A DNA stretch of 64,000 bases from the NCBI RefSeq assembly GCF_036588685.1, contig NC_086382.1, positions 496,001 through 560,000 on the forward strand. Reading direction: 5' to 3'. Shown here in pieces: positions 2,158-61,299 of this stretch. Under the pieces are notes generated by a model. That model saw only the letters and a program-made list of their open reading frames with translations, ran no database searches and was not told the origin of the DNA. The DNA is from Mytilus trossulus (lineage: Eukaryota). How positions within the stretch are numbered: the first letter of the stretch is position 1; each line of letters starts with the position of its first letter. The translations under genes were made by a program, and so were the position numbers.

Positions 2158-5058
2158 TTTTCCATTTGACTAGGACCATGTAGAACCCCTGATAAACAAT
2201 TCGCTGTAGAATAACATCGTCTGCCCTAGCCCTTTTCCATTTGACTAGAACCATGTAGAACCCCGATAAACATTTCGCTGTAGAATAACATCGTCTGCCC
2301 TAGCCCCTTTCCATTTGACTAGAACCATGTAGAACCCCCGATAAACAATTCGCTGTAGAATAACATCGTCTGCCCTAGCCCTTTTCCATTTGACTAGAAC
2401 CATGTAGAACCCCTGATAAACAATTCGCCGTAGAATAACATCGTCTGCCCTAACCCTTTTCTGTTTGACTAGGACCATGTAGAACCCCCGATAAACAATT
2501 CGCTGTAGAATAACATCGTCTGCCCTAGCCCTTTTCCATTTGACTATAACCATGTAGAACCCCCGATAAACAATTCGCTGTAGAATAACATCGTCTGCCC
2601 AAACCCTTTTCCATTTGACAAGAAACATGTAGAACCCCTGATAAACAATTCGCTGTAGAATAACATCGTCTGCCCTAGCCCTTTTCCATTTTACTAAAAC
2701 CATGTAGAACCCCTGATAAACAATTCGCTGTAGAATAACATCGTCTGCCCTAGCCCTTTTCCATTTGACTAGGACCATGTAGAACCCCCTATAAACAATT
2801 CGCTGTAGAATAACATCGTCTGCCCTAGCCCTTTTCCGTTTGACTAGGACCATGTAGAACCCCCGATAAACAATTCGCTGTAGAATAACATCGTCTGCCC
2901 TAGCCCTTTTCCATTTGACTAGGACCATGTAGAACCCCCGATAAACAATTCGCTGTAGAATAACATCGTCTGCCCTAGCCCTTTTCCATTTGACTAGAAC
3001 CATGTAGAACCCCCGATAAACAATTCGCTGTAGAATAACATCGTCTGCCCTAGCCCTTTTCCGTTTGACTAGGACCATGTAGAACCCCCGATAAACAATT
3101 CGCTGTAGAATAACATCGTCTGCCCTAGCCCTTTTTCATTTGACTAGAACCATGTAGAACCCCTGAAAAACAATTCGCTGTAGAATAACATCTTCTGCCC
3201 TAGCCCTTTTCCGTTTGACTAGGACCATGTAGAACCCCCGATAAACAATTCGCTGTAGAATAACATCGTCTGCCCTAGCCCTTTTCCATTTGACTAGGAC
3301 CATGTAGAACCCCCGATAAACAATTCGCTGTAGAATAACATCGTCTGCCCTAGCCCTTTTCCATTTGACTAGAACCATGTAGAACCCCCGATAAACAATT
3401 CGCTGTAGAATAACATCGTCTGCCCAAACCCTTTTCCATTTGACTAGGACCATGTAGAACCCCCGATAAACAATTCGCTGTAGAATAACATCGTCTGCCC
3501 TAGCCCTTTTCCATTTGACTAGGACCATGTAGAACCCCCGATAAACCATTCGCTGTAGAATAACATCGTCTGCCCTAGCCCTTTTCCGTTTGACTAGGAC
3601 CATGTAGAACCCCCGATAAACAATTCGCTGTAGAATAACATCGTCTGCCCTAACCCTTTTTCATTTGACTAGAACCATGTAGAACCCCTGAAAAACAATT
3701 CGCTGTAGAATAACATCTTCTGCCCTAGCCCTTTTCCGTTTGACTAGGACCATGTAGAACCCCCGATAAACAATTCGCTGTAGAATAACATCGTCTGCCC
3801 TAGCCCTTTTCCATTTGACTAGGACCATGTAGAACCCCCGATAAACAATTCGCTGTAGAATAACATCGTCTGCCCTAGCCCTTTTCCATTTGACTAGAAC
3901 CATGTAGAACCCCCGATAAACAATTCGCTGTAGAATAACATCGTCTGCCTAAACCCTTTTCCATTTGACTAGGACCATGTAGAACCCCCGATAAACAATT
4001 CGCTGTAGAATAACATCGTCTGCCCTAGCCCTTTTCCATTTGACTAGGACCATGTAGAACCCCCGATAAACAATTCGCTGTAGAATAACATCGTCTGCCC
4101 TAGCCCTTTTCCGTTTGACTAGGACCATGTAGAACCCCCGATAAACAATTCGCTGTAGAATAACATCGTCTGCCCTAGCCCTTTTTCATTTGACTAGAAC
4201 CATGTAGAACCCCTGAAAAACAATTCGCTGTAGAATAACATCTTCTGCCCTAGCCCTTTTCCGTTTGACTAGGACCATGTAGAACCCCCGATAAACAATT
4301 CGCTGTAGAATAACATCGTCTGCCCTAGCCCTTTTCCATTTGACTAGGACCATGTAGAACCCCCGATAAACAATTCGCTGTAGAATAACATCGTCTGCCC
4401 TAGCCCTTTTCCATTTGACTAGAACCATGTAGAACCCCCGATAAACAATTCGCCGTAGAATAACATCGTCTGCCCTAGCCCTTTTCCATTTGACTAGAAC
4501 CATGTAGAACCCCCGATAAACAATTCGCCGTAGAATAACATCGTCTGCCCTAGCCCTTTTCCATTTGACTAGAACCATGTAGAACCCCCGATAAACAATT
4601 CGCTGTAGAATAACATCGTCTGCCCAAACCCTTTTCCATTTGACTAGGACCATGTAGAACCCCCGATAAACAATTCGCTGTAGAATAACATCGTCTGCCC
4701 TAGCCCTTTTCCATTTGACTAGGACCATGTAGAACCCCCGATAAACAATTCGCTGTAGAATAACATCGTCTGCCCTAGCCCTTTTCCGTTTGACTAGGAC
4801 CATGTAGAACCCCCGATAAACAATTCGCTGTAGAATAACATCGTCTGCCCTAGCCCTTTTTCATTTGACTAGAACCATGTAGAACCCCTGAAAAACAATT
4901 CGCTGTAGAATAACATCTTCTGCCCTAGCCCTTTTCCGTTTGACTAGGACCATGTAGAACCCCCGATAAACAACTCGCTGTAGAATAACATCGTCTGCCC
5001 TAGCCCTTTTCCATTTGACTAGAACCATGTAGAACCCCCGATAAACAATTCGCTGTAG
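2158..5058. repeat. 75-bp satellite array, ~38-39 copies, with higher-order structure
   Basis: Monomer ccatttgactag(g/a)accatgtagaacccccgataaacaattcgctgtagaataacatcgtctgccctagccctttt is repeated with few substitutions. Confidence 0.97.
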
Positions 5059-13080: not shown

Positions 13081-14832
13081 CTAGACTATTGTCTCACTGT
13101 CTGCCTTTATATAACGTTTGCTTTTTTCTACCCGAATTGCCCTGTTTTGTTTAATTGGAATCTGTTGGTAATGATGTTGAGGAACATGATATTCGTACTG
13201 TTTTCGTTCAGGTTTTTTACTAATACATAATTTCCCAACGAAGTTCCTCCAGGAATTAATTGTTTTCGAAGACCATACCCACATACCACTGGTAATTCCC
13301 ACAACAAGCGACATAAATATTTTTAACATAAAAATTTCAATCTTTGGTAAATTTGTGGAATATTTCGAATACCACGAATCCCTGCTTGTGTATTCATAAA
13401 ATAAGCACGCTATGACACAAGCTGCTGGAACAGTATATAAGACGGAAAAGATTCCAATTCGGATCATTAGCACTTCTAGTTTATCTGTTTTAACTCCATC
13501 GTTTCGCACTTGTTTTCGGATTCTAAATAAAGCTACAAAACCAGCGACTAGGAAAGTTATTCCAATGAAGAGGTAGACTAGTAAAGGGGCAATAACAAAG
13601 CCCAGTAAAGTTCGGGTATTCTGATTCCCCACATAACAAACCCCAGTCAATTCATCAGCGTCTACATCACGCATCACTAATATAACAATTGTTTTAATGG
13701 CCGGAATGGCCCATGCCACTAAATGAAAGTAACTACTGTGAATTTGGATGGCCTCGTGACCCCACTTTAATCCTGCTGCCAGGAACCAAGTCAATGTTAG
13801 AATCACCCACCACAGCGAGGCGGCAGTACCGAAAAAGTATAATAATAAAAATACTATAGCACAGTCTGTATTTTCTAAGCCTTCTTGAATTAAAATTCCT
13901 AATCCATTTTGTGGACTTGTCACTGTTGGGTCTTTATCACATGCTATGGATTCTCTTCCTGCAATTAATCTTACTATAAATGCAATGCTGAAAATGTTAA
14001 AGCACATGGATAGAAAAATTATGGGTCTTTCTGGATAACGAAATCGATGTGTTTCAATGATGAATGTTAGCACTGTGAATAGAGTTGATACGAAACATAA
14101 TCCGGCCCAAATAGCCATCCAAATGTCTGCGAAATATTTGTCCTCGCTGCTGAATGCATCATGGTATCCACATTGCAGCGCACATCTGTCCGTTCGGTTT
14201 ATGTACGTGTACATTTCGGCGTGTCTATAATGCATACATTTTAAGCTACTGATTATATTCCAGTCCATAGGAATGGACGGTAGTTGAGTTGGGTACATTG
14301 GATTAGCACCAGGCTGGCCAGGCTTCGAATTTGACCCAGGCTTCGGTCTTCCAGGACGACGAGGTAATGGGTCATCTTCCTCCCCCGGACCGTCCATACA
14401 CATATGATTTTGATCGTTTTTAGGTGGAAATTTTGAGCAATTCAATGCCGCTGGCCACGGAAATCCAAATTCATTTAAAACTGGCCTACAACGTTTTTGA
14501 ACATTGGTACACATTGGTCTACACGGTCCAATTGGGTCCATGACTTTCTCTGTACACATTGGAACGTAAACAGAACACAAGAAAAACTTCAGTTGTTTAG
14601 AACACCCGTATTGTATCAGAGGGGTAAATGTCTGCAGTTGTAACTCGGCATCTTGTTGTAAATCGTGTCCTACAAGATTTGGCATACCCGTAACGTTATA
14701 TCCTAACCCTTTGCACATTTCTATTCGGATAGGGTCACATTTTCGGACTATTTCCGTACCAAACATATACAATCCTTTCGGCAGAAATAAACACATAAAG
14801 CTTGCCAACACTACACGTGTTGTCAATTCCAT
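13081..14832 (-). CDS. fzd4: Frizzled-4 (Wnt receptor), single coding exon, 583 aa
   Basis: ATG at 14832 ([17 protein letters not shown], signal-peptide-like). FZD4-type [49 protein letters not shown] with 10 Cys. Seven TM segments with [13 protein letters not shown], KTxxxW motif (KTINSW) and C-terminal PDZ ligand ETIV. Confidence 0.96.
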
Positions 14833-19190: not shown

Positions 19191-20730
19191 CTGTACTGTA
19201 AACCTACAGATAAACATCAGTACCTTTCTCCCCAAAGCTGTCACCCCAAGCACTGTACAAAAAGTATCCCGTACAGTCAAGCTCTCAGAATAAAGCGGAT
19301 TCGGATTTGCTCCTCTGATGAGGCTGTCACTCAGCGGTTACAGGAACTTCGCGAATTTCTAATCAAACGAGGTTATAAGAAATGGGACATATATAAGGGG
19401 TTTGCGCGTGCTAACAATAACAGCCGCAAAGACCTGTTACAGTACAGAAAGAAGAGGCGCAGCAAAATTGTTCCATTTGTGTTAACATACAATCCCGCTT
19501 TTTCAAACCTTTCACGTTTGATCCGTGCCAATTGGCAAAGTATTGCCAATCACCCAAAATTATCCAAAATTTTTCCCGATCCTCCTGTCTTAGCTTTTCG
19601 GAGACCAGCAAGTCTAAAAGACTTATTTGTAAAAGCTGCCGTATCCTCGAATAAAAGCTGCTCAGCTACAGGATGGTGCAAGTCGTGTGGTAACAAACGA
19701 TGTCTGACTTGCCAACAAATAGTGAATACTCAAACATTTACTTGCCACTCCACTGGGTCTGTGTACACAATATTTTGTAATGTAACTTGCAAAACCCAGA
19801 ATGTTGTATACATTCTTCAGTGTCGATGTGGCATGCAGTATGTTGGCGAGACAGAACAGCCATTCAACAAACGCATGAATGGTCATCGTAGCGACTACAC
19901 ATGCAAGCCCGACCCACCCGTAAATCGTCATTTAAGATCACATGGGCACGCCCAAGCTGATCTTAAAAAACTTACCATCACTATCATAGATCACAACGAG
20001 GATTGGTCAAAGGCCGACAGACTTGCCCGGGAAAGTTTTTGGATAAGAAAGCTGAGGACAGTTTCCCCAGAGGGCATTAATGAAAAAACATAGAAGAGTC
20101 ACTCATTTTTCCTACCATCACTAATTTCCTGTCATCACTTGTGGCCAGTTACTACGGCTTCCGTACTGGACCCTTACACTTTTCAGGAATTTTTGAATTA
20201 TATTAGTTTTGATTACAGTTGGCAAGGATGTGTAAGTACGCAGCCACGTTCTATTACTTAACCTTAGTAAACATTTATTACTCAAATTTCTTATCATCAA
20301 ATTACTATATTTTTTAGATGTTTAAATACGCAGTCTCTGATGCAACTGCCCTACCGTTGTCATATTTTTAATATCATACCAGTTTAGATCGGTCAGGACT
20401 GTTTATTGGGACTATATTTCCACGCAGTTGTTTAACATCTCAACTGTCAACACCTTTGGGAATTTAGAGTTGTGCCTGTTCACATCGTAAATAACTTTTT
20501 TTATTTTTGGCATATTTTTGTAGTCTTTGCGCTGTGTTTGAAAATTTTAAAATTGTTCCAGCGTTCGCTTAAATTGTATAATTCAAGATTTTGATAGAGT
20601 CTTAATTTGAATTGACATGATTCATTTTTCATCGTGCAATTACCGAAGAAGGATATCTGTTATCCGAAATATCTAACATATTGTTCGTTTTATTGTGTTT
20701 TTGGTGATGTTGTATTCTTTTAGACTTGTT
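19187..20730 (+). mobile_element. 5'-truncated Penelope-like retroelement (RT thumb, Cys-rich linker, GIY-YIG endonuclease, 3' region), probably Neptune-type
   Basis: LYCKPTDKHQYL (frameshift) SCHPKHCTKSIPYSQALRIKRI...FLIKRGY runs in frame into ORF 19479-20093. That ORF has CKSCGNKRCLTC, NVVYILQCRCGMQYVGET, RMNGH, RESFWI and GIN. The element starts directly after (TA)n. Confidence 0.9.
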
Positions 20731-22300
20731 ATATATTATGTAGTGTACTGCATCATGTTAATATGATCCATCGCCCCGTAAGATTGATCGTTGACTATTT
20801 ATTCAGTCATTTTATATATATAGGAGTATACATAAAACTTTCGTCTCAGGCACACCTCTAGAAAGTAACACAAATAATACTGTGAGTAGGCTAAATATAT
20901 ATAGCTGAACTGCAGGAGGTACCAAGGGACTGCTATATGGCATGGTGTGTGCATTTTAAAATCTGTATCGGGACACTAGTGATATGGTAAGATATTAGAT
21001 TGAGGTATAGGAGGAGGGTTGAGATCTCACAAAACATGTTTAAGCCCGCCGCTGTTCTGTCAGGAGCCTCTAACCTTTGTTAGTTTTGTATGATTTTTAA
21101 TTTTAGTTCATTTATATTTTTCGAGTTTAATATGACGTCCATTAAAACTGAACTAGTACACATTTTTGTTAAGGGGCCTGCTGAATATAAAAAAAATGTG
21201 CGGGTATGATTGTCAATGAGACAACTCTACACAAGAGTGCATGCCTCCGGGTGCGGGATTTTCTCGCTGTGTTGAAAACCTGTTGGTGGTCTTTGGTCGT
21301 TGTCTGCTCTTTGGTCGTGTTGATGACACAAATCCCATTTCCATTCTCAATTTTATGTATGTTGAAAGAGCATACGATAATCAGTTCTCGGAAAATTGTG
21401 TAACTACTACCCCAAAAACATTGATGAAAAGTTCAGGAAACGTGTAACATCAAGATTGGTGCAACATCCACTTGTTATGAGCAAATAAGGTCGCATATGG
21501 TATCACCTGCCTCATTTTAGAAAAATAAATATTATAAAGCAACTGAAAACAAAAAAAATCGTTCAGTCAAATAATCATGTTCGCGCATGATTTCTCAATT
21601 TTTGCAAGACTCATTTTAGAACCTTCATATTTGAGCATTGTGTTTTGTCGTTTCTTATTATCCTTTCGATACATGTTTGTTTAATCTTTTCTCCGAATGC
21701 CCAGTCTTAATAAATTTCTATGGTTCTCTGAAAGGGGAAAAAGGTGGGGGTGTCTTCTCTGTCCCACATGTGTACATTGAAGTGTGTTGTTTTCATACTT
21801 TAATATGTGAAAATGTTAAATTTTGGTAACTTAAAAAATATTTGGAAAAAATAAACTTATTTCACATGTCAATTCGCATTAGGGCGCACTTTCACAGATC
21901 TGACAAACCTGCCGGGGTTAGATTGTTGGTGTTTCCGTCGTCTGCTAATTGAAGATATGACTTAACACCAAAACGGAGTAATAACAACAAATCACCACAA
22001 TGTACCGACATGTAAAATATGAATCATTATACAAAAGACGAGCAAGTCATCGCAATGTACATCAAATTGACAAACATCTAATAAAACTGATGAAAAAGTA
22101 AATTTAATAAAACTGCACCAACGTACATCAATGAAAAATGGAATTAGACTAAAAACCTTCAAACACTGTAAATCAACAATATACCATAATGTGCACTGCT
22201 CATTAGAAAGACTAAATATATAAAAAAAAACAACTCACCAAAAAAGTTGTAATTTCAAATATATAATAAAACATTCTAAACACCATGGATTAGAATGTAA

Positions 22301-22650
22301 GAGAGTCGTGGTTTAGTGGTAAGTGCATCGGACTACTAACACAAAGGTTCCTCGTTCGATTCCCGCCTGGGTTGGAAATTTCAGGAACTCAATCTTCGGC
22401 TCTCCCCTAACACCATTTGCGAGTATGTTCTCCAGGAAACAATGATAGTCCGTCGGAAGGGGACGATAAATGGCCGTTCCGTGTTAAGAAAGAGCCATGT
22501 CTCTTGCATGTTAAAGACACCCTTGTAGATTTCGAAAAAGAGCAGGCTAATGCCGCTACAAGGCAGCACTCGCACCCGCAAAGTGGAAAGGGATTAATAT
22601 AAGTTGCAAAACTTGCTTCCCAATCCACTATAAATAAATATGTTTAAACT
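22301..22650 (+). mobile_element. Full-length tRNA-derived SINE (350 bp) with 7-bp TSD
   Basis: A-box tggtttagtgg and B-box gttcgattcc in the head. Central gacgataaatgg...gttaaagacaccc...ttcgaaaaagagcagg resembles conserved SINE core domains (Deu/Nin-like, tentative). TSD aatgtaa at 22294-22300 and 22651-22657. Confidence 0.88.
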
Positions 22651-23861
22651 AATGTAATACAATTCGTTGAATTAACATTAACCATGCACATCAATCGACA
22701 GAATAAATCCCGAAGAGAGACATTTGGTGTGATTTTTAGCCTCCTACAAATCCTACAAAATAAAAACTATCGGAAGTATATTATACAACATATTTATACT
22801 GTACAGAACGCATTTATATAACTCATTAAAATAACTGTCGTTAATCAAAGTGCAACCGTACATTCCTGATCCACTATTGACACAATAGATTCGAAACAAG
22901 AAGTTTTAACAGCTTCCTTTTTTCCAAATTTTTACCAATTTTAAAAAATATGATAGTACTTTTAAATGTAAAATGGACTTTGCTCGTTGTTGAAGGCCAT
23001 ACGGTGACCTATAGGTGTCACTTTCTGTGTCATTTAGTCTCCTGTTGAGTTGTTTCATTGCAATAATCTTCTTATTATTATATAATACAGTGTTATTTAT
23101 TTTTAGAATATTTGAGACAAATATGAGTCATAAGTAAAATAAACCATGAATTAATTATATTATGTTTTTGATTGTTTTACCAGTTTCACATTCTTGTGAA
23201 AATTATTTGAAATCTAATTTGAATTTTGCATTACCAAATTCAATATCATGCTAGTATACATTGGAAATTAAAGCATGTCGCACAACGAGTTAGGAATCAG
23301 ATATAATTGATCACATCCAATGAACATATAAGCGTAAATCACATAATAAAGTGGTGATGTATCAATCAATCAATCAATCATTCAAACAGAAAGCAAACAC
23401 GACGCCAATCAAGCAATCAGAAAGCAAGTAAACAAGACAAAAAAGCAAGCAAGCCTGTTATTCAGTGGTTGTCGTTTGTTGATGTGTAACATATTTGTTA
23501 TTTGTTCATTTAATGTACACAAATTAGGCTGTTAGATTTCTCGTTTGAATCGTTTTAAATTTGTCATTTCGGGCCTATTATAGCTAACTATGCAAAATGG
23601 GTTTGTTCATTGTTGAAGGCCGTACGTTGACCTATAATAGTTTTTAATTTCTGTGATATTTGATCTCTTGTGGAGAGTTGTCTCAGTGGCAATCATACCA
23701 CATCTTTTTTTTATAAGCAAGCAAGTAAGCAAACAATCAAGAAAGCAAAATATGTAGAAAAATTAAAAACAAACTAAAAATTATATAACATGAAAATGAA
23801 AACTAAGTTTTCTTTTTAAAATTTAAGGAAATAGTCGGGTTCTATTTTAACTGACACCAAT

Positions 23862-24613
23862 CTAAACACCTTTTGTTTTCATATCCCGAATAATTCCCTT
23901 TTCTGTCCTGAAAAACACGTTCAACAGAAGATTAAAGATATTTCCTACATTATCTGGACTTGGCTGTGCTAGCTGAGTAGATGCTGTTGTTATAGGCGTG
24001 GTAAGATTGGACTTCATTCTAGGCGTGGTAAGATTGGACTTCATTCTATGCGTGGTAAGATTGGACTTCATTCTAGGCGTGGTAAGATTGGACTTCATTC
24101 TAGGCGTGGTAAGATTGAACTTCGGAAAACGATGAATTATTCCTTGATCTAGGTCAACAGGATATTCCTCTTGATCAACAGGTCCTTTCACACAGTTACT
24201 CTCCTGATCATCACTGAGAGGAAATTTCGTGCATTCCAAAACTTCAGGCCACGGGAATCCGAATGTATTCAAAATAGGCCGGCAACCTTTCTGAACATCA
24301 AGACAAAGCGATCTGCATGGGCCGATGTTGTCATGGATTGATTCGTCACACTTCGGATAATATGCGGAACACAGAAATAGAATCAATTTACTTGAGCACC
24401 CGTACTGAATTAAAGGAGCATATGTTAGCAGGTTTAATTTAGCATCCTGAATGTTATCCTGTCCAGCAAAATTTGGCATGGTTGTCACGTTATAGTTCAC
24501 TGTTCTCGTACACATTCCTCTGGGAATATCTTGACATCTACGCACATGTTAGACATATCCATACAACATAGATATATTAAACTAAAAAATATTATATATC
24601 TCGTTAATTCCAG
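23862..24613 (-). pseudogene. fzd4-derived CRD-only (secreted frizzled-like) gene; disrupted allele or pseudogene
   Basis: ORF 23862-24545 holds a complete Frizzled CRD (10 Cys; [30 protein letters not shown]) and no 7TM region. Upstream, in another frame, CTG-E-L-T-R-Y-I-I-F-F-S-L-I-Y-L-C-C (from 24613) parallels fzd4 MELTTRVVL. One missing base near 24546 separates the two frames. Confidence 0.8.
23993..24120. repeat. 27-bp coding minisatellite x~4.7 encoding NLTTPRMKS
   Basis: taggcgtggtaagattggacttcattc at 23993, 24020, 24047, 24074 and 24101 (partial). Confidence 0.92.
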
Positions 24614-25002
24614 GGCTTATGTAGTTATACAATTAATTAGTTTATGCATACAGTTCCAGAAATAATTGTCAGTACAGGCTTTAAGTTAAATTAATGTTTG
24701 CACACTTTCCCCAACCGTTCACAGTCTTTTCATAATTATGTTGAGAAATACGATGGGATGTAATACTATCAACAAAATGTTGTGCTAAAAATAAGTTAGT
24801 AGTGTGTTATCAAGGTTACTGGAACTTTGAAACATAAAAAAGTAATAGCAGAAACTGAGTTTCTGTGATAATTTCTTCTTTGATTATTTACGCTAAGGTT
24901 TGATGTGTTTGACAATATCTACTTTGAATAATTTCAGTGAGGATTGGGGAAAAGAATGACTATGTTTTAGAAATGAACATGATACGACCCAAGATAGGAT
25001 AG

Positions 25003-25146
25003 CATTGGCGGAGCCAGGGGTGGGTTCCGGGGGTTGGAACCCCCTTTTTTGGCCAATCAATGCATTTGAATGGGGACATATAATTGGACCCCCCCTTTTG
25101 TCCTGGGTTGGGACCCCTCTTTTTAAATGGCTGGATTCCCCTCTGG
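25003..25146. mobile_element. Short GC-rich MITE-like repeat (ggcgga(g/t)ccag-type termini); relatives near 33510-33695 and 53305-53442
   Basis: ggcggagccagggg ... gctggattcccctctg form imperfect inverted ends, with internal G/C runs. Confidence 0.5.
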
Positions 25147-25976
25147 ATAGAAATTTATAATATGCATCGCAAAACACATAAGCCGGCCGGGCATCAAAAG
25201 GAAATTGATATTAAGCCTGCAAAAAATCATATTTCTCCCCTTCCCCCAAATAGACAATGAAATTGTCGTCATTTGTATTGTGTATGCAGAAAAAAAGTAA
25301 ACACAGATACATTTTGGAAGTCTTTTCCAAGGTACCAAATAAAAAGAACATAATGGTAGCTTTTAGCTACTAGTATTTAGATGCCGTAAAATGATAGCAG
25401 CTACATTTTTAAAAGCTCAACATTTGTATATTCTTTCCTTTTTACATCTGTCAATTTTATTTTCTTCACGTATTCGAATATTGCATCATCTTTAGCGATA
25501 AATGGCAATGATGTAGGTTTAAGGTATATTATTAGGTGTTTTGCATACAGTATAATTGTTTTGTCTTTTCTGTTTTTCGTTTTTTGCCAGGGGTTTGTCA
25601 GCCTCATTATCATTGGTCAGTTCTGGTTGTTTCTTTGACATCTGCTGGTTCTCTTGTATCTAATGCTGACAATGTATCTTATCTACGCTAAAATTAAGAC
25701 ATAACTCTTAATTTTAACCTCTTCCAGGGTAGCAAAACCTACGTTTTAGCAAAATGAACAATTTGAAATACTTCATCTCATATTTGTTTTCTCTCTCTCA
25801 ATAAACTAACAAACAATTTGAACTACGTTCATTGAATTAAATCTTTGGGGCATTGCTATCTCAGTCCACGGAACTATATCTTGGATTGATCGATGATCTG
25901 TAATGGGCATTTACAGTTTTTTGTATCGATATATTATCCTATTTTACTTTTAACATCTTATACGATTTGACAGTTC

Positions 25977-26694: not shown

Positions 26695-26801
26695 GATTGG
26701 TGGACGACGACGGCGTGCTGACTTCTATGCTCAGCACACGATCCAGAGACCTCAGGCAGCCAAGCGAGTTCCCAGACAAGTAGCGTAAACAATATTCAGT
26801 G

Positions 26802-27560
26802 ATGGAGTACAGCTTCCGACCACAATGGAGACCATGGAACATTCAGTCAGGTTACAGTCCAGCATGTGGGAGGTGTGGCAAATTTCACAAACATTATATT
26901 TGTAACTCTATCAATCAGAGATGTTATTCGTGCGGAAAATTCGGACATTATTCTAGAAAGTGTTTTTCTAAAGTTACAAAGGACAGCAAAAGTAAATCAG
27001 TTAGTGTGAAATCCAGAAAACAGAAAGAGCGCGATACAGCTAGGATAAACAGCTATATTCAGTGTAAAAATATTATCCGTGCTTTACCATTCTCTGGTAT
27101 GCGTAATTCACCGTTTATTCAATATTTGGATATTTCAAATGTGCTCAAAGCAGAATTAAAAAGTGTGAAACAGAAAATTACCAAGGAAAAGAATACAAAT
27201 CTACAACAGCAAAAGTGCATCGAGGCACTCAAAATTCAATTAAAGAATAAGCAAATCATCGTATCAGAAAGAGACCAGTTCAAGCAAGAACTTGAAAACC
27301 TGCGTCAACAGAAAGAAGAAAGTGCTTCGCGCATAAACGTACAAGAATATGTGGATCAAATTCAAGAATTAAAGGACCAAGTAATCGAAAAAGACGGGAC
27401 TGTTAAAATGGTGCAAGATCTTTACTATATGCGTTCGACCGAGTTTACAGATGAAATCCAATCATTGAAAAATGAAAAACAAGCTTTGGAAAAAGAAAAG
27501 GCAGACCTATGTTCAAAGGTAAATTTTCAAGCGGATTCTATTTCTCAATTAACTTTTTAA
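26802..27560 (+). CDS. LTR-element ORF: two zinc knuckles, basic region, long coiled coil (frame continues past the TAA to 27668)
   Basis: ATG at 26802. CGRCGKFHKHYIC and CYSCGKFGHYSRKC (CX2CX4HX4C). Heptad-like E/K/Q/L-rich C-terminal half. In-frame continuation LQDLNHELHLVSRQNQQRPNNNNRHYNNRRGGRFR*. Confidence 0.8.
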   Translation: MEYSFRPQWRPWNIQSGYSPACGRCGKFHKHYICNSINQRCYSCGKFGHYSRKCFSKVTKDSKSKSVSVKSRKQKERDTARINSYIQCKNIIRALPFSGMRNSPFIQYLDISNVLKAELKSVKQKITKEKNTNLQQQKCIEALKIQLKNKQIIVSERDQFKQELENLRQQKEESASRINVQEYVDQIQELKDQVIEKDGTVKMVQDLYYMRSTEFTDEIQSLKNEKQALEKEKADLCSKVNFQADSISQLTF

Positions 27561-58800: not shown

Positions 58801-59027
58801 GGGAAGATCTTGTTAAATTGAAGTCTAGTAATTTCCCAAAATAATAACATACATTGATAAACACCTCCCCGTTTTTTTGTCCTTTATTTGTTTTGTAAAA
58901 CATCATTTCATAATAAATCGGGATTGTCATTTTCTCTGCATACTTCATATTGAGACAGTCATATCCTCAATAGTATACTCACATCACTTAAAATTTTAAC
59001 ACATTTACTTAATATATTTACTTACAG

Positions 59028-59690
59028 TGAAAAAAGAAAAGAGTTACAACATTTTTGATGTGCATGATGTAGATATAAGAAATGGAAAGACAGATATTAT
59101 CTTGCAGCTGATTTGCGCATGCCTAAATTCAAAACAAAGAAGCCTTCACGAATTTGAACTTCAATTCAATATTGTTAAATATTCTGAACGGATAACATCG
59201 AAAGAGTTTGATGACTTTTATAAAAAGATTGAGACCAAACTACTGGAAACCTTCCGTAAAAACTTTTGTGATTTTATAGAAAGGAAAGGTGATTGTGACT
59301 CAAACCGGTTGATAATCATTGTGAAGAAGTCCCCAGAGCTATATAGCCTTAAAAACTATTTATATATACCAACTGCATCAAGTGTATATGAATCACAATA
59401 TGAAAAGACAGTTTGTATCCTTAAACAGACAGGAGATTCAGAGAAATTACCAAAACCAGTTGAAAAAGGTAGTTATAAAATATGTGAAATCGTCACTAAT
59501 TTGCGGCAAGAAAATGTTGATGTACAGTTCAAGACCTTAAATACAGAAAAGAATATTGCAAAAAATATGGCAGATCATTTCAAATACATTTCAGCGTTTG
59601 CTAATAAAGATGGTGGTTGTCTTTATTTTGGTATAGAGGACAAAGATGGCAGGGTAGTAGGTGTTAATTCAGAACAGAGAGATACAATAG
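59028..59690 (+). CDS. Internal exon of a Schlafen-like (AlbA_2 domain) gene
   Basis: Acceptor ttacttacag, donor AG|gtgggt, phase 1-1, 221 codons open. Motifs ICACLNS, ENVDVQFK and YISAFANKDGGCLYFGIED...VVG are typical of the Schlafen core. Confidence 0.85.
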
Positions 59691-61299
59691 GTGGGTATAT
59701 GTTTATGAATCATATATCAATAGACAGAAGTTGACTGAATTTTTACCTGAACATTTAGCAATGAAGTTTTTTATTGCAAAAGATACGCCAAGATAATGAA
59801 CAAATACAAACTGGCATTAAGGTTCATTGTTCAACAATCAAGATAATGATCGAATGCATGCATAAATATCTCAATTTGCAGGAACCCATTTAGATGGTTG
59901 GTTTAAACACCATGGAGGTCCTGTTCTACATGTGGTATCAGTCGTGTTGACCATGAAAATATAAATTCCTTCAATATAAAAAGGCACTTGTCGAAGACAA
60001 ACTGATAATGCTCTGGAATAAAACAGAAAGCGACAGGTTCACAAACAACTACACATGAAACTAAACAATAAGCAACATGGACCCATCAAACCAAAGTGGT
60101 ATCAAAGGAGATAAACGGATCCTTATGTGACCACAATCATTTTGCTCATATAATTACAAATGCGCTGAAAAGTATCATTCGAAAAAAAGGACGGCTTGTG
60201 GTAACGACAATATATGTGGTTAACTGTAGAATAAAAATCTAGCTACCCCCTTTCAAAGTAATCTTGATAGAAATCGCTTCTCTTGAAGACTGTATTTTTG
60301 TCAGTATTTTTGTCAGAAGAGAGTACGGGTATGTGGGTTATAAAAACAGAATTATATTCACTTATAACCCCGTCCCTCGTTACCCGAATGTGACCTACTG
60401 AATTAGACTTATTACTGGGTGTTTACTAACATGAGCACCACTACCGGTGCCACATGTAGAGCAAGATCTGCTTACCCTGCCGGAGCACCAGAGATCAACC
60501 CATTGTTTTGTAGGGTTCCAGTTATCCAGTCTTTAATTTTCTATTTTGTGTTTTGTTTATAGTTAATTGTCTGTTTGTCTGTTTGTCTTTTTCGTTTTTG
60601 GCCATGGTGTTGTCAGTTTATTTTTGACTTGCCTCTCTCTGAGTGTAAGCTGTGACACAGACATTTCTTAACTGATATTAACGTTTATTAAACATTCGGA
60701 CGGTTTACTATAAATGATTAAATCAAAATATTATATACCGTTTATTGTCAAATGTGAACATATTACTCAATAAATTCTGTAATAATTATTTGATGCACAT
60801 TTCCCGTTTTGCCCGTTTTATCAATTGATTTATATGAAGACAATTATAATGAAACTTTTTGTATTTATTATATAAATTATATTCTCTAAACTAAGTTTCA
60901 TTACACGTAATACTGTACAAGCATAGGATTATCGTAATTAGTAATCGTTTACGGATTAACCAATTACATTTTGTAATCAGTAATCAAGTATTTTCACATT
61001 AAAACTAATCGTAAAAGTGGGGCGAAAGATACCAGAAGGACAGTAATGTAATCAATTAATAAGCAAATAAAAAAACAGGCTCCATCCTGATATCGTTTAT
61101 AATACTTTAAATTTTTAACTTGCCGACTACCAATTTATTTGATGGATTTGCTTTTGATTTACAAGCAGGCATAAAAAAATTAATCAAACAAACGTTTACT
61201 GCAATTGATCATGTTTCAATATGATTGATATTAACTATTTTATAATATTAGTATATACACAGACAGTTTTTTTTAATGAATTAACCTTTCCTAATATTT

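What the first reader, a model, noticed from the sequence alone, without database searches (positions are those of the whole stretch)
23862..24613. fzd4 partial duplicate turned into a secreted CRD-only putative Wnt decoy, next to its parent
Seen: a second Frizzled CRD lies 9 kb upstream of fzd4 in the same orientation. It is intronless and strongly diverged, yet keeps all 10 Cys, and it has no 7TM or netrin domain. Its hidden leader (CTG GAA TTA ACG AGA..., L-E-L-T-R-YIIFFSLIYLCC) parallels fzd4 M-E-L-T-T-R. Restoring one base gives ...MSN-I-VRRC versus fzd4 TE-I-VRKC. Known: free Frizzled CRDs bind and titrate Wnt. Inference: a lineage-specific, sFRP-like receptor/decoy pair that arose by tandem duplication, independently of true sFRPs.
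Basis: partly seen in the sequence, partly recalled or inferred. Interest (0 to 1): 0.8.

Follow-up and report, generated by a model that had tools for sequence, protein, structure and literature searches.

The report
Frizzled-4 CRD-only duplicate, broken allele
Beside the mussel's Frizzled-4 Wnt-receptor gene lies an old partial copy that keeps only the Wnt-binding domain; several Mytilus species have it and it may make a soluble Wnt modulator, but the copy in this genome is frameshifted and has no normal start codon.

Summary
The minus-strand ORF 23862-24545 encodes one Frizzled cysteine-rich domain (CRD; Pfam Fz only). It is 54% identical to the CRD of the intronless fzd4 that starts 9.0 kb downstream on the same strand. 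All 10 Cys are kept, and the window holds no 7TM remnant.

Trees put it inside bivalve FZD4 and far from sFRPs. Orthologues are already annotated next to FZD4 in M. galloprovincialis and M. coruscus, and also in M. edulis.

The copy is old and was constrained. Between the paralogues pS is 0.74 (saturated) and pN 0.28. Changes among orthologues avoid FZD4-conserved columns (8 of 61 against 20 of 59, p=0.009). Five of six lipid-groove residues are identical.

Two corrections. The frame break is a 10-letter gap, not one base: contigs of 4 of 4 other runs carry 10 more letters there. And no known orthologue model includes an ATG-led signal peptide.

Secretion, transcription and Wnt binding are unproven. 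The window's allele is most likely a null allele of a Mytilus-specific, FZD4S-like CRD-only gene. Interest is moderate.

The parts
24546..24613 (-). Remnant of the fzd4 signal-peptide leader. CTG (24613-24611) stands where fzd4 has ATG, followed by a hydrophobic core. In-frame ATGs are at 24562-24560 and 24556-24554. The frame is 1 off from the CRD frame.
   Evidence: Sequence. Alignment A1: 40/69 identical here, against 35/83 upstream. Shuffle test 36/2000.
24545..24546 (-). Site of the frame break. The window lacks 10 letters that the contigs of four other runs carry.
   Evidence: table 8, records 7, 16, 23 and 32: each is 10 letters longer than the window span it covers. The shared interval is 24467-24568. 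The protein alignment has no other length difference there.
24192..24536 (-). FZD4-type cysteine-rich domain, from Cys1 to Cys10.
   Evidence: Pfam Fz. PDB FZD4 CRD E 8.5e-41. AF2 model of the M. edulis orthologue has pLDDT above 90 in the CRD and matches 5uwg with target-normalised TM 0.95 and rmsd 1.3.
23993..24123 (-). In-frame 27-bp tandem repeat, 4.9 copies, encoding NLTTPRMKS units. It is expanded in this haplotype.
   Evidence: TRF, 97% matches. Orthologues P0001, P0002 and P0123 have one unit and P0122 about two.
23865..23945 (-). Conserved C-terminal tail, predicted as one long helix. It is unrelated to fzd4.
   Evidence: Alignment A2. AF2 helix 168-192, pLDDT about 71-77. No paralogue in the genome, next best E 1.5e-4 on the repeat part.
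23862..23864 (-). Stop codon TAG. Four of five orthologues with a C-terminus end at the same place.
   Evidence: P0123 reads through for 4 more residues. P0122 departs from the repeat onward.
13081..14832 (-). Parent gene fzd4: intronless, 583 aa, signal peptide plus CRD plus 7TM.
   Evidence: It is 583/583 identical to an unnamed NCBI protein and 581/583 to M. galloprovincialis FZD4.

Best explanation
This is the local copy of a Mytilus-specific gene. The gene was born by an old partial tandem duplication of the intronless fzd4. Only the start codon, signal-peptide leader, CRD and the first linker residues (fzd4 residues 1 to about 154) were copied.

The copy then gained an unrelated tail: a disordered N-glycosylation-type repeat and a conserved C-terminal helix.

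For most of its history it was translated and folded as a disulfide-bonded CRD with an intact Wnt-lipid groove (shown by the substitution patterns). It therefore most likely acted as a soluble, or peripherally attached, Wnt-binding modulator. This would be a gene-encoded counterpart of the vertebrate FZD4S/Fz4-v1 splice form, and it is an inference.

The allele in this window is disabled. CTG stands where the parent has ATG, and 10 letters are missing between the only in-frame ATGs and the CRD. Ordinary scanning therefore makes a short peptide and no CRD.

Other individuals, including a run 99% identical to the window, carry the 10 letters. This points to a segregating null allele, or less likely an assembly error.
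For: Identity and origin:
-.
- Gene neighbourhood kept.

Age and constraint since duplication:
- Nei-Gojobori on 126 codons gives pS 0.739 (saturated) and pN 0.281. A copy that was neutral from birth would have pN near pS.

Constraint within Mytilus:
- Among 4 orthologues, 8 of 61 FZD4-conserved columns vary, against 20 of 59 others (Fisher p=0.009).
- Cys is kept in 10 of 10 columns in all.
- The tree needs at least 67 amino-acid changes in 191 columns. Neutral expectation is then 2.8-3.7 nonsense changes (P of none 0.025-0.06) and 3.1 Cys losses (P of none 0.045).

Lipid groove:
- The human FZD4 palmitoleate contacts are T81, F82, L85, L132, F135 and F137 (PMC5458758, passages read).
- By the alignment they map to T, Y, L, L, F, F. 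The stretch around the last three (PILNTFGFPWP) is invariant in all orthologue rows of alignment A2.

Leader:
-.

The 10-letter gap:
-, 4 of 4 runs. X1 has 4 other letters in 450.
Against: - No annotated or assembled orthologue protein includes the leader. They start at MLHIV, MDMSNMLHIV, MSNMVDIV or MLDIV. An ATG-led signal peptide is therefore not shown in any species.
- No run on record as RNA holds the stretch. The runs I laid are only guessed to be RNA, and their cover is biased by how they were found.
- The clusters hold no RefSeq accession for this protein, while the FZD4 cluster holds XP_ entries for M. galloprovincialis and M. californianus.
- The CRD evolves very fast. Pairwise identities among orthologues are 96-107 of 120, against 119-120 of 120 for FZD4 of the same genus.
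- Protein databases hold only open frames, so the nonsense test is biased.
- I had no orthologue DNA, so there is no true dN/dS.
Confidence: 0.55

Rival explanations
1. It is a relic. The partial duplicate was functional long ago, but it lost its start codon before the Mytilus species split. It is now a slowly decaying, untranslated open frame in all of them, and the window's 10-letter gap is just one more lesion.
For: - There is CTG at the parental ATG position.
- No orthologue model has a leader.
- Amino-acid change is about 40 times faster than in the FZD4 CRD (summed crown branches about 0.37 against 0.009).
- ORF divergence in organisms B and C (7-11%) is no lower than in the 5' flank (10/159) (table 8).
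- The M. galloprovincialis model P0122 loses the common C-terminus.
- There are few database members: 4 plus 1.
Against: - Variation within Mytilus avoids FZD4-conserved columns (p=0.009), and all Cys are kept.
- There are no stops despite at least 67 replacements.
- The window's own 227 codons are open.
- The tail helix is as conserved as the CRD.
Confidence: 0.3
2. The 10-letter gap is an assembly error, and this animal's gene is intact apart from the CTG.
For: All 4 other runs have the letters, including one 99% identical to the window.
Against: A clean 10-letter loss in non-repetitive sequence is not the usual long-read error (my knowledge). Mytilus haplotypes differ a great deal here: three CRD-only protein types 89% alike in the 120 CRD columns occur in or near the M. 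edulis complex. I could not lay the assembly's own reads.
Confidence: 0.1
3. The ORF is one exon of a larger spliced gene. An upstream exon could supply ATG and signal peptide, or downstream exons could add other domains.
For: A possible acceptor (a T-run followed by AG) lies inside the leader at about 24585. X1 has isolated cover at 25374-25522.
Against: - Contigs of X1, X13, X3 and X8 run collinear with the genome through the leader up to 24761.
- No joint within 23862-24761 is among those listed (125 further joints were not shown).
- The stop codon position is shared by 4 of 5 orthologues.
- Orthologue models are stand-alone.
- No other Frizzled-related coding is in the window, and the neighbouring ORFs are transposon-like.
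Confidence: 0.05

Closest known systems
FZD4S / Fz4-v1, the secreted splice variant of vertebrate Frizzled-4 (PMC1291380 and PMC4077065, abstracts read)
   Same: It is a FZD4-type CRD without the 7TM and cytoplasmic parts, followed by a short unrelated tail. According to those abstracts, such a CRD alone can both enhance and inhibit Wnt signalling.
   Different: FZD4S comes from alternative splicing of the fzd4 gene itself and keeps its signal peptide. Here fzd4 is intronless and the CRD-only form is a separate, old, fast-evolving duplicate. Its start codon and secretion are not shown, and it is frameshifted in this window.
[quoted passage not shown]
   Same: They have a CRD without 7TM and are thought to bind Wnts outside the cell.
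   Different: sFRPs carry a C-terminal netrin (NTR) module, and their CRDs form a separate clade (100/99). PDB sFRP3 and sizzled score E 1e-16 to 1e-17, against 1e-41 for FZD4. This genome has its own sFRP-type CRD elsewhere (L011).
Littorina saxatilis XP_070190108.1 (P0303, 'frizzled-10-like', 311 aa)
   Same: It is a molluscan protein made only of FZD4-derived CRDs. It lies on a contig of the same length as that species' FZD4, so probably the same contig.
   Different: It has a clear ATG-led signal peptide and two CRDs that are sister to Littorina's own FZD4 (100/97). It is therefore an independent and much younger event, with a stem of 0.11 against 0.68.
Unnamed FZD4-CRD plus single-TM proteins (P0347, P0348, P0353)
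   Same: They are truncated FZD4 derivatives that keep the CRD and lose the 7TM.
   Different: They have a signal peptide and one hydrophobic membrane span. They group with tick and onychophoran FZD4. Their source organisms are not named.

Membership tests
Frizzled CRD (Pfam PF01392 Fz) | About 110-120 residues with 10 conserved Cys, and a profile match above the curated cut-off. | tested here: met
   95 bits against a cut-off of 32.1. 10 of 10 Cys columns are kept in 4 of 4 orthologues. The fold model matches FZD4 CRD structures with target-normalised TM 0.90-0.96.
FZD4 subfamily of CRDs | Groups with FZD4 orthologues rather than with other Frizzleds or sFRPs. | tested here: met
   It sits inside the starred clade of Mytilus, Tegillarca and Pinctada FZD4 (98/97, 99/98). 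PDB FZD4 scores 1e-41, against FZD10 at 8e-28 and FZD1/2/7 at 1e-26.
Frizzled receptor (class F GPCR) | Seven-transmembrane region (PF01534) after the CRD. | tested here: not met
   There is no PF01534 match. tblastn of fzd4 finds no 7TM remnant in the window.
sFRP | An sFRP-type CRD plus a C-terminal NTR module. | tested here: not met
   Only Fz is found in Pfam. The tail is a repeat plus one helix. The CRD is separated from sFRPs at 100/99.
FZD4S / Fz4-v1 | Product of alternative splicing of the fzd4 gene. | tested here: not met
   It is a separate ORF 9 kb from an intronless fzd4.
Secreted protein (any) | An initiation codon followed by a signal peptide in frame with the mature domain. | tested here: not met
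   In the window there is CTG instead of ATG, and the leader is out of frame with the CRD. For other species this is inconclusive: their models start after the leader and I had no DNA. No SignalP was available.
Wnt-binding CRD | The palmitoleate groove residues of FZD4 (T81, F82, L85, L132, F135, F137; PMC5458758). | tested here: met
   Five are identical and one is F to Y, by my mapping of the alignment onto the residue list. The stretch around the last three (PILNTFGFPWP) is invariant in all orthologue rows of alignment A2. Binding itself is not testable here.
Pseudogene (this allele) | A lesion that prevents translation of the domain. | tested here: met
   A 10-letter gap relative to 4 of 4 other runs and to the orthologue proteins, and no ATG before the leader. 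The window's private replacements fall 1 in conserved and 4 in variable columns, so they show no long neutral decay.

The most novel reading that the evidence does not exclude
Mytilus keeps a gene-encoded soluble FZD4 CRD in place of the vertebrate FZD4S splice form, because its fzd4 has no intron to retain. The protein would be started at the CUG, which sits in a good context (GCC CUG G), so that the old fzd4 signal peptide is still used. Working and null alleles would segregate in populations, and the protein would evolve fast like other polymorphic mussel secreted proteins. Together with the independent Littorina two-CRD gene, this would mean that molluscs repeatedly make Wnt modulators from FZD4 by partial duplication.
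Probability: 0.15. Interest if true: 0.6.

Novelty: new variant of a known kind. Interest (0 to 1): 0.4.

Why it matters
Soluble CRDs tune Wnt gradients. The known ones are the ancient sFRP family and a FZD4 splice form. If this gene is active, a separate, old, receptor-derived CRD-only gene beside its parent would be a third route to the same tool. Its broken and intact alleles would give a natural knock-out for testing Wnt modulation in mussel development or shell growth.

If it is only a relic, it is still a clear example of how long a partial duplicate can keep a fold-constrained open frame. It is also a warning that the public 'FZD4' annotations of 182-195 aa in Mytilus are not receptors.

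Tried and rejected
- **Orthologue DNA.** A metagenome scan with the orthologue alignment found 150 pattern matches, but none encoded a relative. I therefore could not compute a true dN/dS or read the start codon in other species. I used protein-level tests instead and the paralogue comparison.
- **RNA evidence.** The run search listed 13 runs, none on record as RNA. The laid contigs are short (156-603 letters), and their cover of the ORF is biased by the way the runs were chosen. X1 also covers 4 of 12 unique bins outside the searched stretch, which fits patchy DNA as well as RNA. I do not count this as proof of transcription.
- **Differences inside the ORF.** One search did not print them (151 rows not shown). 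Only totals per record are known. The 10-letter insertion is inferred from record and window spans, not from table 4.
- **DNA homology beyond the coding part.** blastn finds only 277 bases at 67%. The upstream flank is no better than shuffles.
- **Origin of the tail.** No paralogue in the genome. No tail match among the best 150 of 2587 representatives. That list is ranked by CRD score, so a tail-only relative could be missed.
- **sFRP identity and 'exon of a larger gene'.** Considered and rejected.
- **Tree 1.** It had 54 rows. A very long own-genome row (L004 domain 1, branch 4.49) attached to the CRD-only clade, which I take as long-branch attraction.
- **Tree 2.** I dropped 13 rows: own L004 domains 1 and 2, L005, L008, L009, L012, Diadema P0043, two crustacean sFRPs, Polyplax P0024, and three rows whose CRD columns are identical to rows kept (P0122 to P0001; P0244 and P0245 to the window's FZD4). 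I added 6 rows.
- **Labels.** The label 'mytilid' for P0125-P0127 is my guess.
- **Literature.** Searches found no paper on this Mytilus gene in the held library. I opened no supplements. Presence/absence gene lists of Mytilus pangenome papers might bear on whether this gene is dispensable, and I did not see them.

Full report
**What is there**

On the minus strand an open frame runs from 24545 to the TAG at 23864-23862 (227 codons). Its only Pfam match is the Fz domain (E 5.3e-27, residues 4-110).

On the same strand the next gene downstream is an intronless fzd4. Its ATG is at 14832 and it encodes 583 aa with Fz plus the Frizzled 7TM region. The distance from the CRD ORF's stop to the fzd4 ATG is 9,029 bases.

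The two CRDs share 68 of 127 residues (E 1e-46). tblastn of the whole fzd4 protein against the window finds only residues 29-154 at this place and nothing of the 7TM part. The window has no N. The ORFs between and around the two genes are transposon-like: a GIY-YIG domain at 19479-20093 and a zinc knuckle at 26799-27560.

**The leader and the frame break**

Upstream of the CRD, in a frame shifted by one, the sequence reads LELTRYIIFFSLIYLCCMDMSN, starting from CTG at 24613-24611.

- In alignment A1 this stretch pairs with the fzd4 start and signal peptide ([12 protein letters not shown]...). Identity is 40/69, against 35/83 for the 90 columns upstream and 228/362 in the CRD.
- Only 36 of 2000 shuffles reach the leader's alignment score. 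For the 68 bases upstream, 1289 of 2000 shuffles do.
- Peak hydropathy is 2.69, against 2.80 for fzd4.

Contigs from four runs of four coded organisms cross the site, and each is exactly 10 letters longer than the window span it covers:

| Run, record | Window span | Record span |
|---|---|---|
| X1, record 7 | 24119-24568 | 144-603 |
| X13, record 16 | 24305-24618 | 1-324 |
| X3, record 23 | 24428-24608 | 1-191 |
| X8, record 32 | 24467-24612 | 1-156 |

(All, table 8.) The orthologue proteins read MDMSNMLHIVRRC (M. galloprovincialis P0122) and MSNMVDIVHRC (P0123). This places three extra codons plus one base just before the VRRC of the window. With those letters present, the leader frame and the CRD frame are one.

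X1 differs from the window by 4 letters in 450. The intact form therefore occurs in the same or a very close species.

**Whose genome, and who else has the gene**

The window's FZD4 is 583/583 identical to an unnamed NCBI protein. It is 581/583 identical to M. galloprovincialis FZD4, 570/583 to M. californianus and 568/583 to M. coruscus. The genome is therefore a Mytilus of the edulis group.

A search with the 227-aa ORF gave 235 hits among 2403 candidates.

- The best are 'CD344/FZD4' of M. edulis (P0001, 195 aa, 74% over the full length) and 'FZD4' of M. coruscus (P0002, 195 aa, 65%).
- Everything else is at most 52% identical and covers the CRD only.
- FZD4 fragments score near E 1e-35 and sFRPs at 1e-18 or weaker.

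The M. edulis cluster also holds two M. galloprovincialis models (P0122, 182 aa; P0121, partial) and one Logan protein (P0123).

In the own genome there is one copy. A profile of the orthologues, run against 1.84 billion representatives, matched over its full length (1-195) only P0002. No other listed protein matched the tail (best 150 of 2587 listed).

**Family placement**

- In a 54-row CRD tree the five Mytilus CRD-only rows form a clade (99/90). It sits inside a starred clade (98/97) with the FZD4 of Mytilus, three unnamed close FZD4s, Tegillarca and Pinctada. The seven sFRPs and one own-genome CRD (L011) are split off at 100/100.
- A cleaner 47-row tree gives the same result: CRD-only clade 100/100 with stem 0.68, enclosing FZD4 clade 99/98, sFRPs 100/99.
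- Solved structures rank the same way: FZD4 8.5e-41, FZD10 8e-28, FZD1/2/7 about 1e-26 to 1e-25, FZD5/8 about 1e-24 to 1e-21, sizzled and sFRP3 1e-17 to 1e-16.
- An AlphaFold model of the M. edulis orthologue has pLDDT above 90 through the CRD. It superposes on the FZD4 CRD with palmitoleate (5uwg) at target-normalised TM 0.95 and rmsd 1.3 Å.

**Is it, or was it, a working gene?**

*Between the two paralogues in the window.* Synonymous sites are saturated (pS 0.739) while pN is 0.281 (126 codons). The FZD4 CRD hardly changes in this genus (119-120 of 120), so nearly all replacements lie on the copy's branch. A copy that was neutral from birth would have pN close to pS. The copy was therefore constrained for most of a long history.

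*Within Mytilus.* The CRD changes fast: 96-107 of 120 identical between orthologues. The changes are not random, however.

- 8 of 61 columns that are at least 90% conserved among 29 FZD4s vary, against 20 of 59 other columns (Fisher p=0.009).
- All 10 Cys are kept in all four sequences.
- The four-taxon tree needs at least 67 replacements in 191 shared columns. Neutral expectation is then 2.8-3.7 nonsense changes (P of none 0.025-0.06) and 3.1 Cys losses (P of none 0.045).

The nonsense figure is biased, because databases hold open frames only. The other two tests are not.

*The lipid groove.* The six palmitoleate-contact residues of human FZD4 (T81, F82, L85, L132, F135, F137; PMC5458758, passages read) map to T, Y, L, L, F, F by the alignment. 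The stretch around the last three (PILNTFGFPWP) is invariant in all orthologue rows of alignment A2.

*The tail.* It has no relative in the genome. It consists of the 27-bp repeat (4.9 copies here, one or two in the orthologues), a low-confidence linker, and a conserved helix (residues 168-192 of P0001, pLDDT about 71-77).

**What speaks against a working secreted protein**

- The window has no ATG before the leader, and the frame is broken.
- None of the four full-length orthologue models includes the leader.
- The clusters hold no RefSeq accession for the protein, while the FZD4 cluster does.
- No run on record as RNA holds the stretch. The runs I laid are RNA only by guess.
- Their contigs lie collinear on 23735-24761 with no listed joint in that span. 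This fits an unspliced single-exon transcript, but it fits DNA equally well.
- ORF divergence in organisms B and C (19/171, 14/181, 25/338, 9/146) is not lower than in the 5' flank (10/159).

**Reading**

The best fit is a Mytilus-specific FZD4-derived CRD-only gene. It was long maintained as a folded protein with an intact lipid groove. The copy in this window is a null allele or, less likely, mis-assembled.

The gene's present activity in other haplotypes, its start codon, its secretion and its Wnt binding all remain to be shown.

The closest known thing by function is FZD4S/Fz4-v1 (abstracts of PMC1291380 and PMC4077065). Those abstracts report that the CRD alone modulates Wnt signalling in both directions. 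'Decoy' is therefore too narrow a word even if the protein is made.

**Parallels found in passing**

- Littorina saxatilis has a RefSeq protein with a signal peptide and two CRDs that are sister to its own FZD4 (100/97).
- Unnamed proteins combine a FZD4-type CRD with one membrane span.

FZD4 CRD-only derivatives therefore arise repeatedly.

**Open point**

With synonymous sites saturated, the duplication should predate the genus. Yet no orthologue outside Mytilus appears in the protein collections. It may be lost, unannotated, or too diverged.

Noticed in passing
window 2158-5058: A 75-bp satellite, 38.7 copies at 95% matches. It gives long spurious minus-strand ORFs (MVLVKRKRARADDVILQRIVYRGFY units).
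   Followed up: partly
window 19479-20093 (+): A 204-aa ORF with a GIY-YIG nuclease domain (E 1.7e-7) between the CRD-only ORF and fzd4. It is probably a Penelope-like element fragment (my guess).
   Followed up: partly
window 59027-59734 (+): A 235-aa ORF with a Schlafen AlbA_2 domain (E 2.7e-10).
   Followed up: no
window 22245-22691, 22841-23138, 23437-23734, 24927-25224: Very high summed contig depth in all four runs (up to 260,000). These are copies of abundant short interspersed repeats flanking the CRD ORF on both sides.
   Followed up: no
G000:C8:5461616-5587993: A cluster of 7 CRD-encoding ORFs (119-267 aa) within 126 kb. L005 and L012 group together (100/96) outside FZD4 and the sFRPs. 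L012 starts with a clear signal peptide.
   Followed up: partly
L004 / L010 (G000:C3:62286282-62287349, -): One 489-aa open frame with a signal peptide, two diverged CRDs and a Ser/Thr/Gly-rich tail. It is a two-CRD secreted protein like the unnamed P0003.
   Followed up: partly
G000:C11:8861703-8867151: Three further weak CRD matches within 5.5 kb, one with three stops inside.
   Followed up: no
proteins P0277-P0302: Very large poly-CRD proteins, for example a Penaeus chinensis uncharacterized protein of 1834 aa with 13 Fz-type stretches. They outrank single FZD4s against the CRD-only profile.
   Followed up: no
P0121/P0123 versus P0122/P0001: M. galloprovincialis carries two CRD-only protein types. 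P0123, which matches the partial model P0121, and P0122/P0001 are 107 of 120 identical in the CRD, so the locus is unusually polymorphic or introgressed.
   Followed up: partly
window 24551-24724, run X1 record 8: This contig has 2 more letters and 1 other letter than the window, somewhere in the leader or 5' flank. Their place was not printed, so it is unknown whether they touch the CTG or the leader frame.
   Followed up: no
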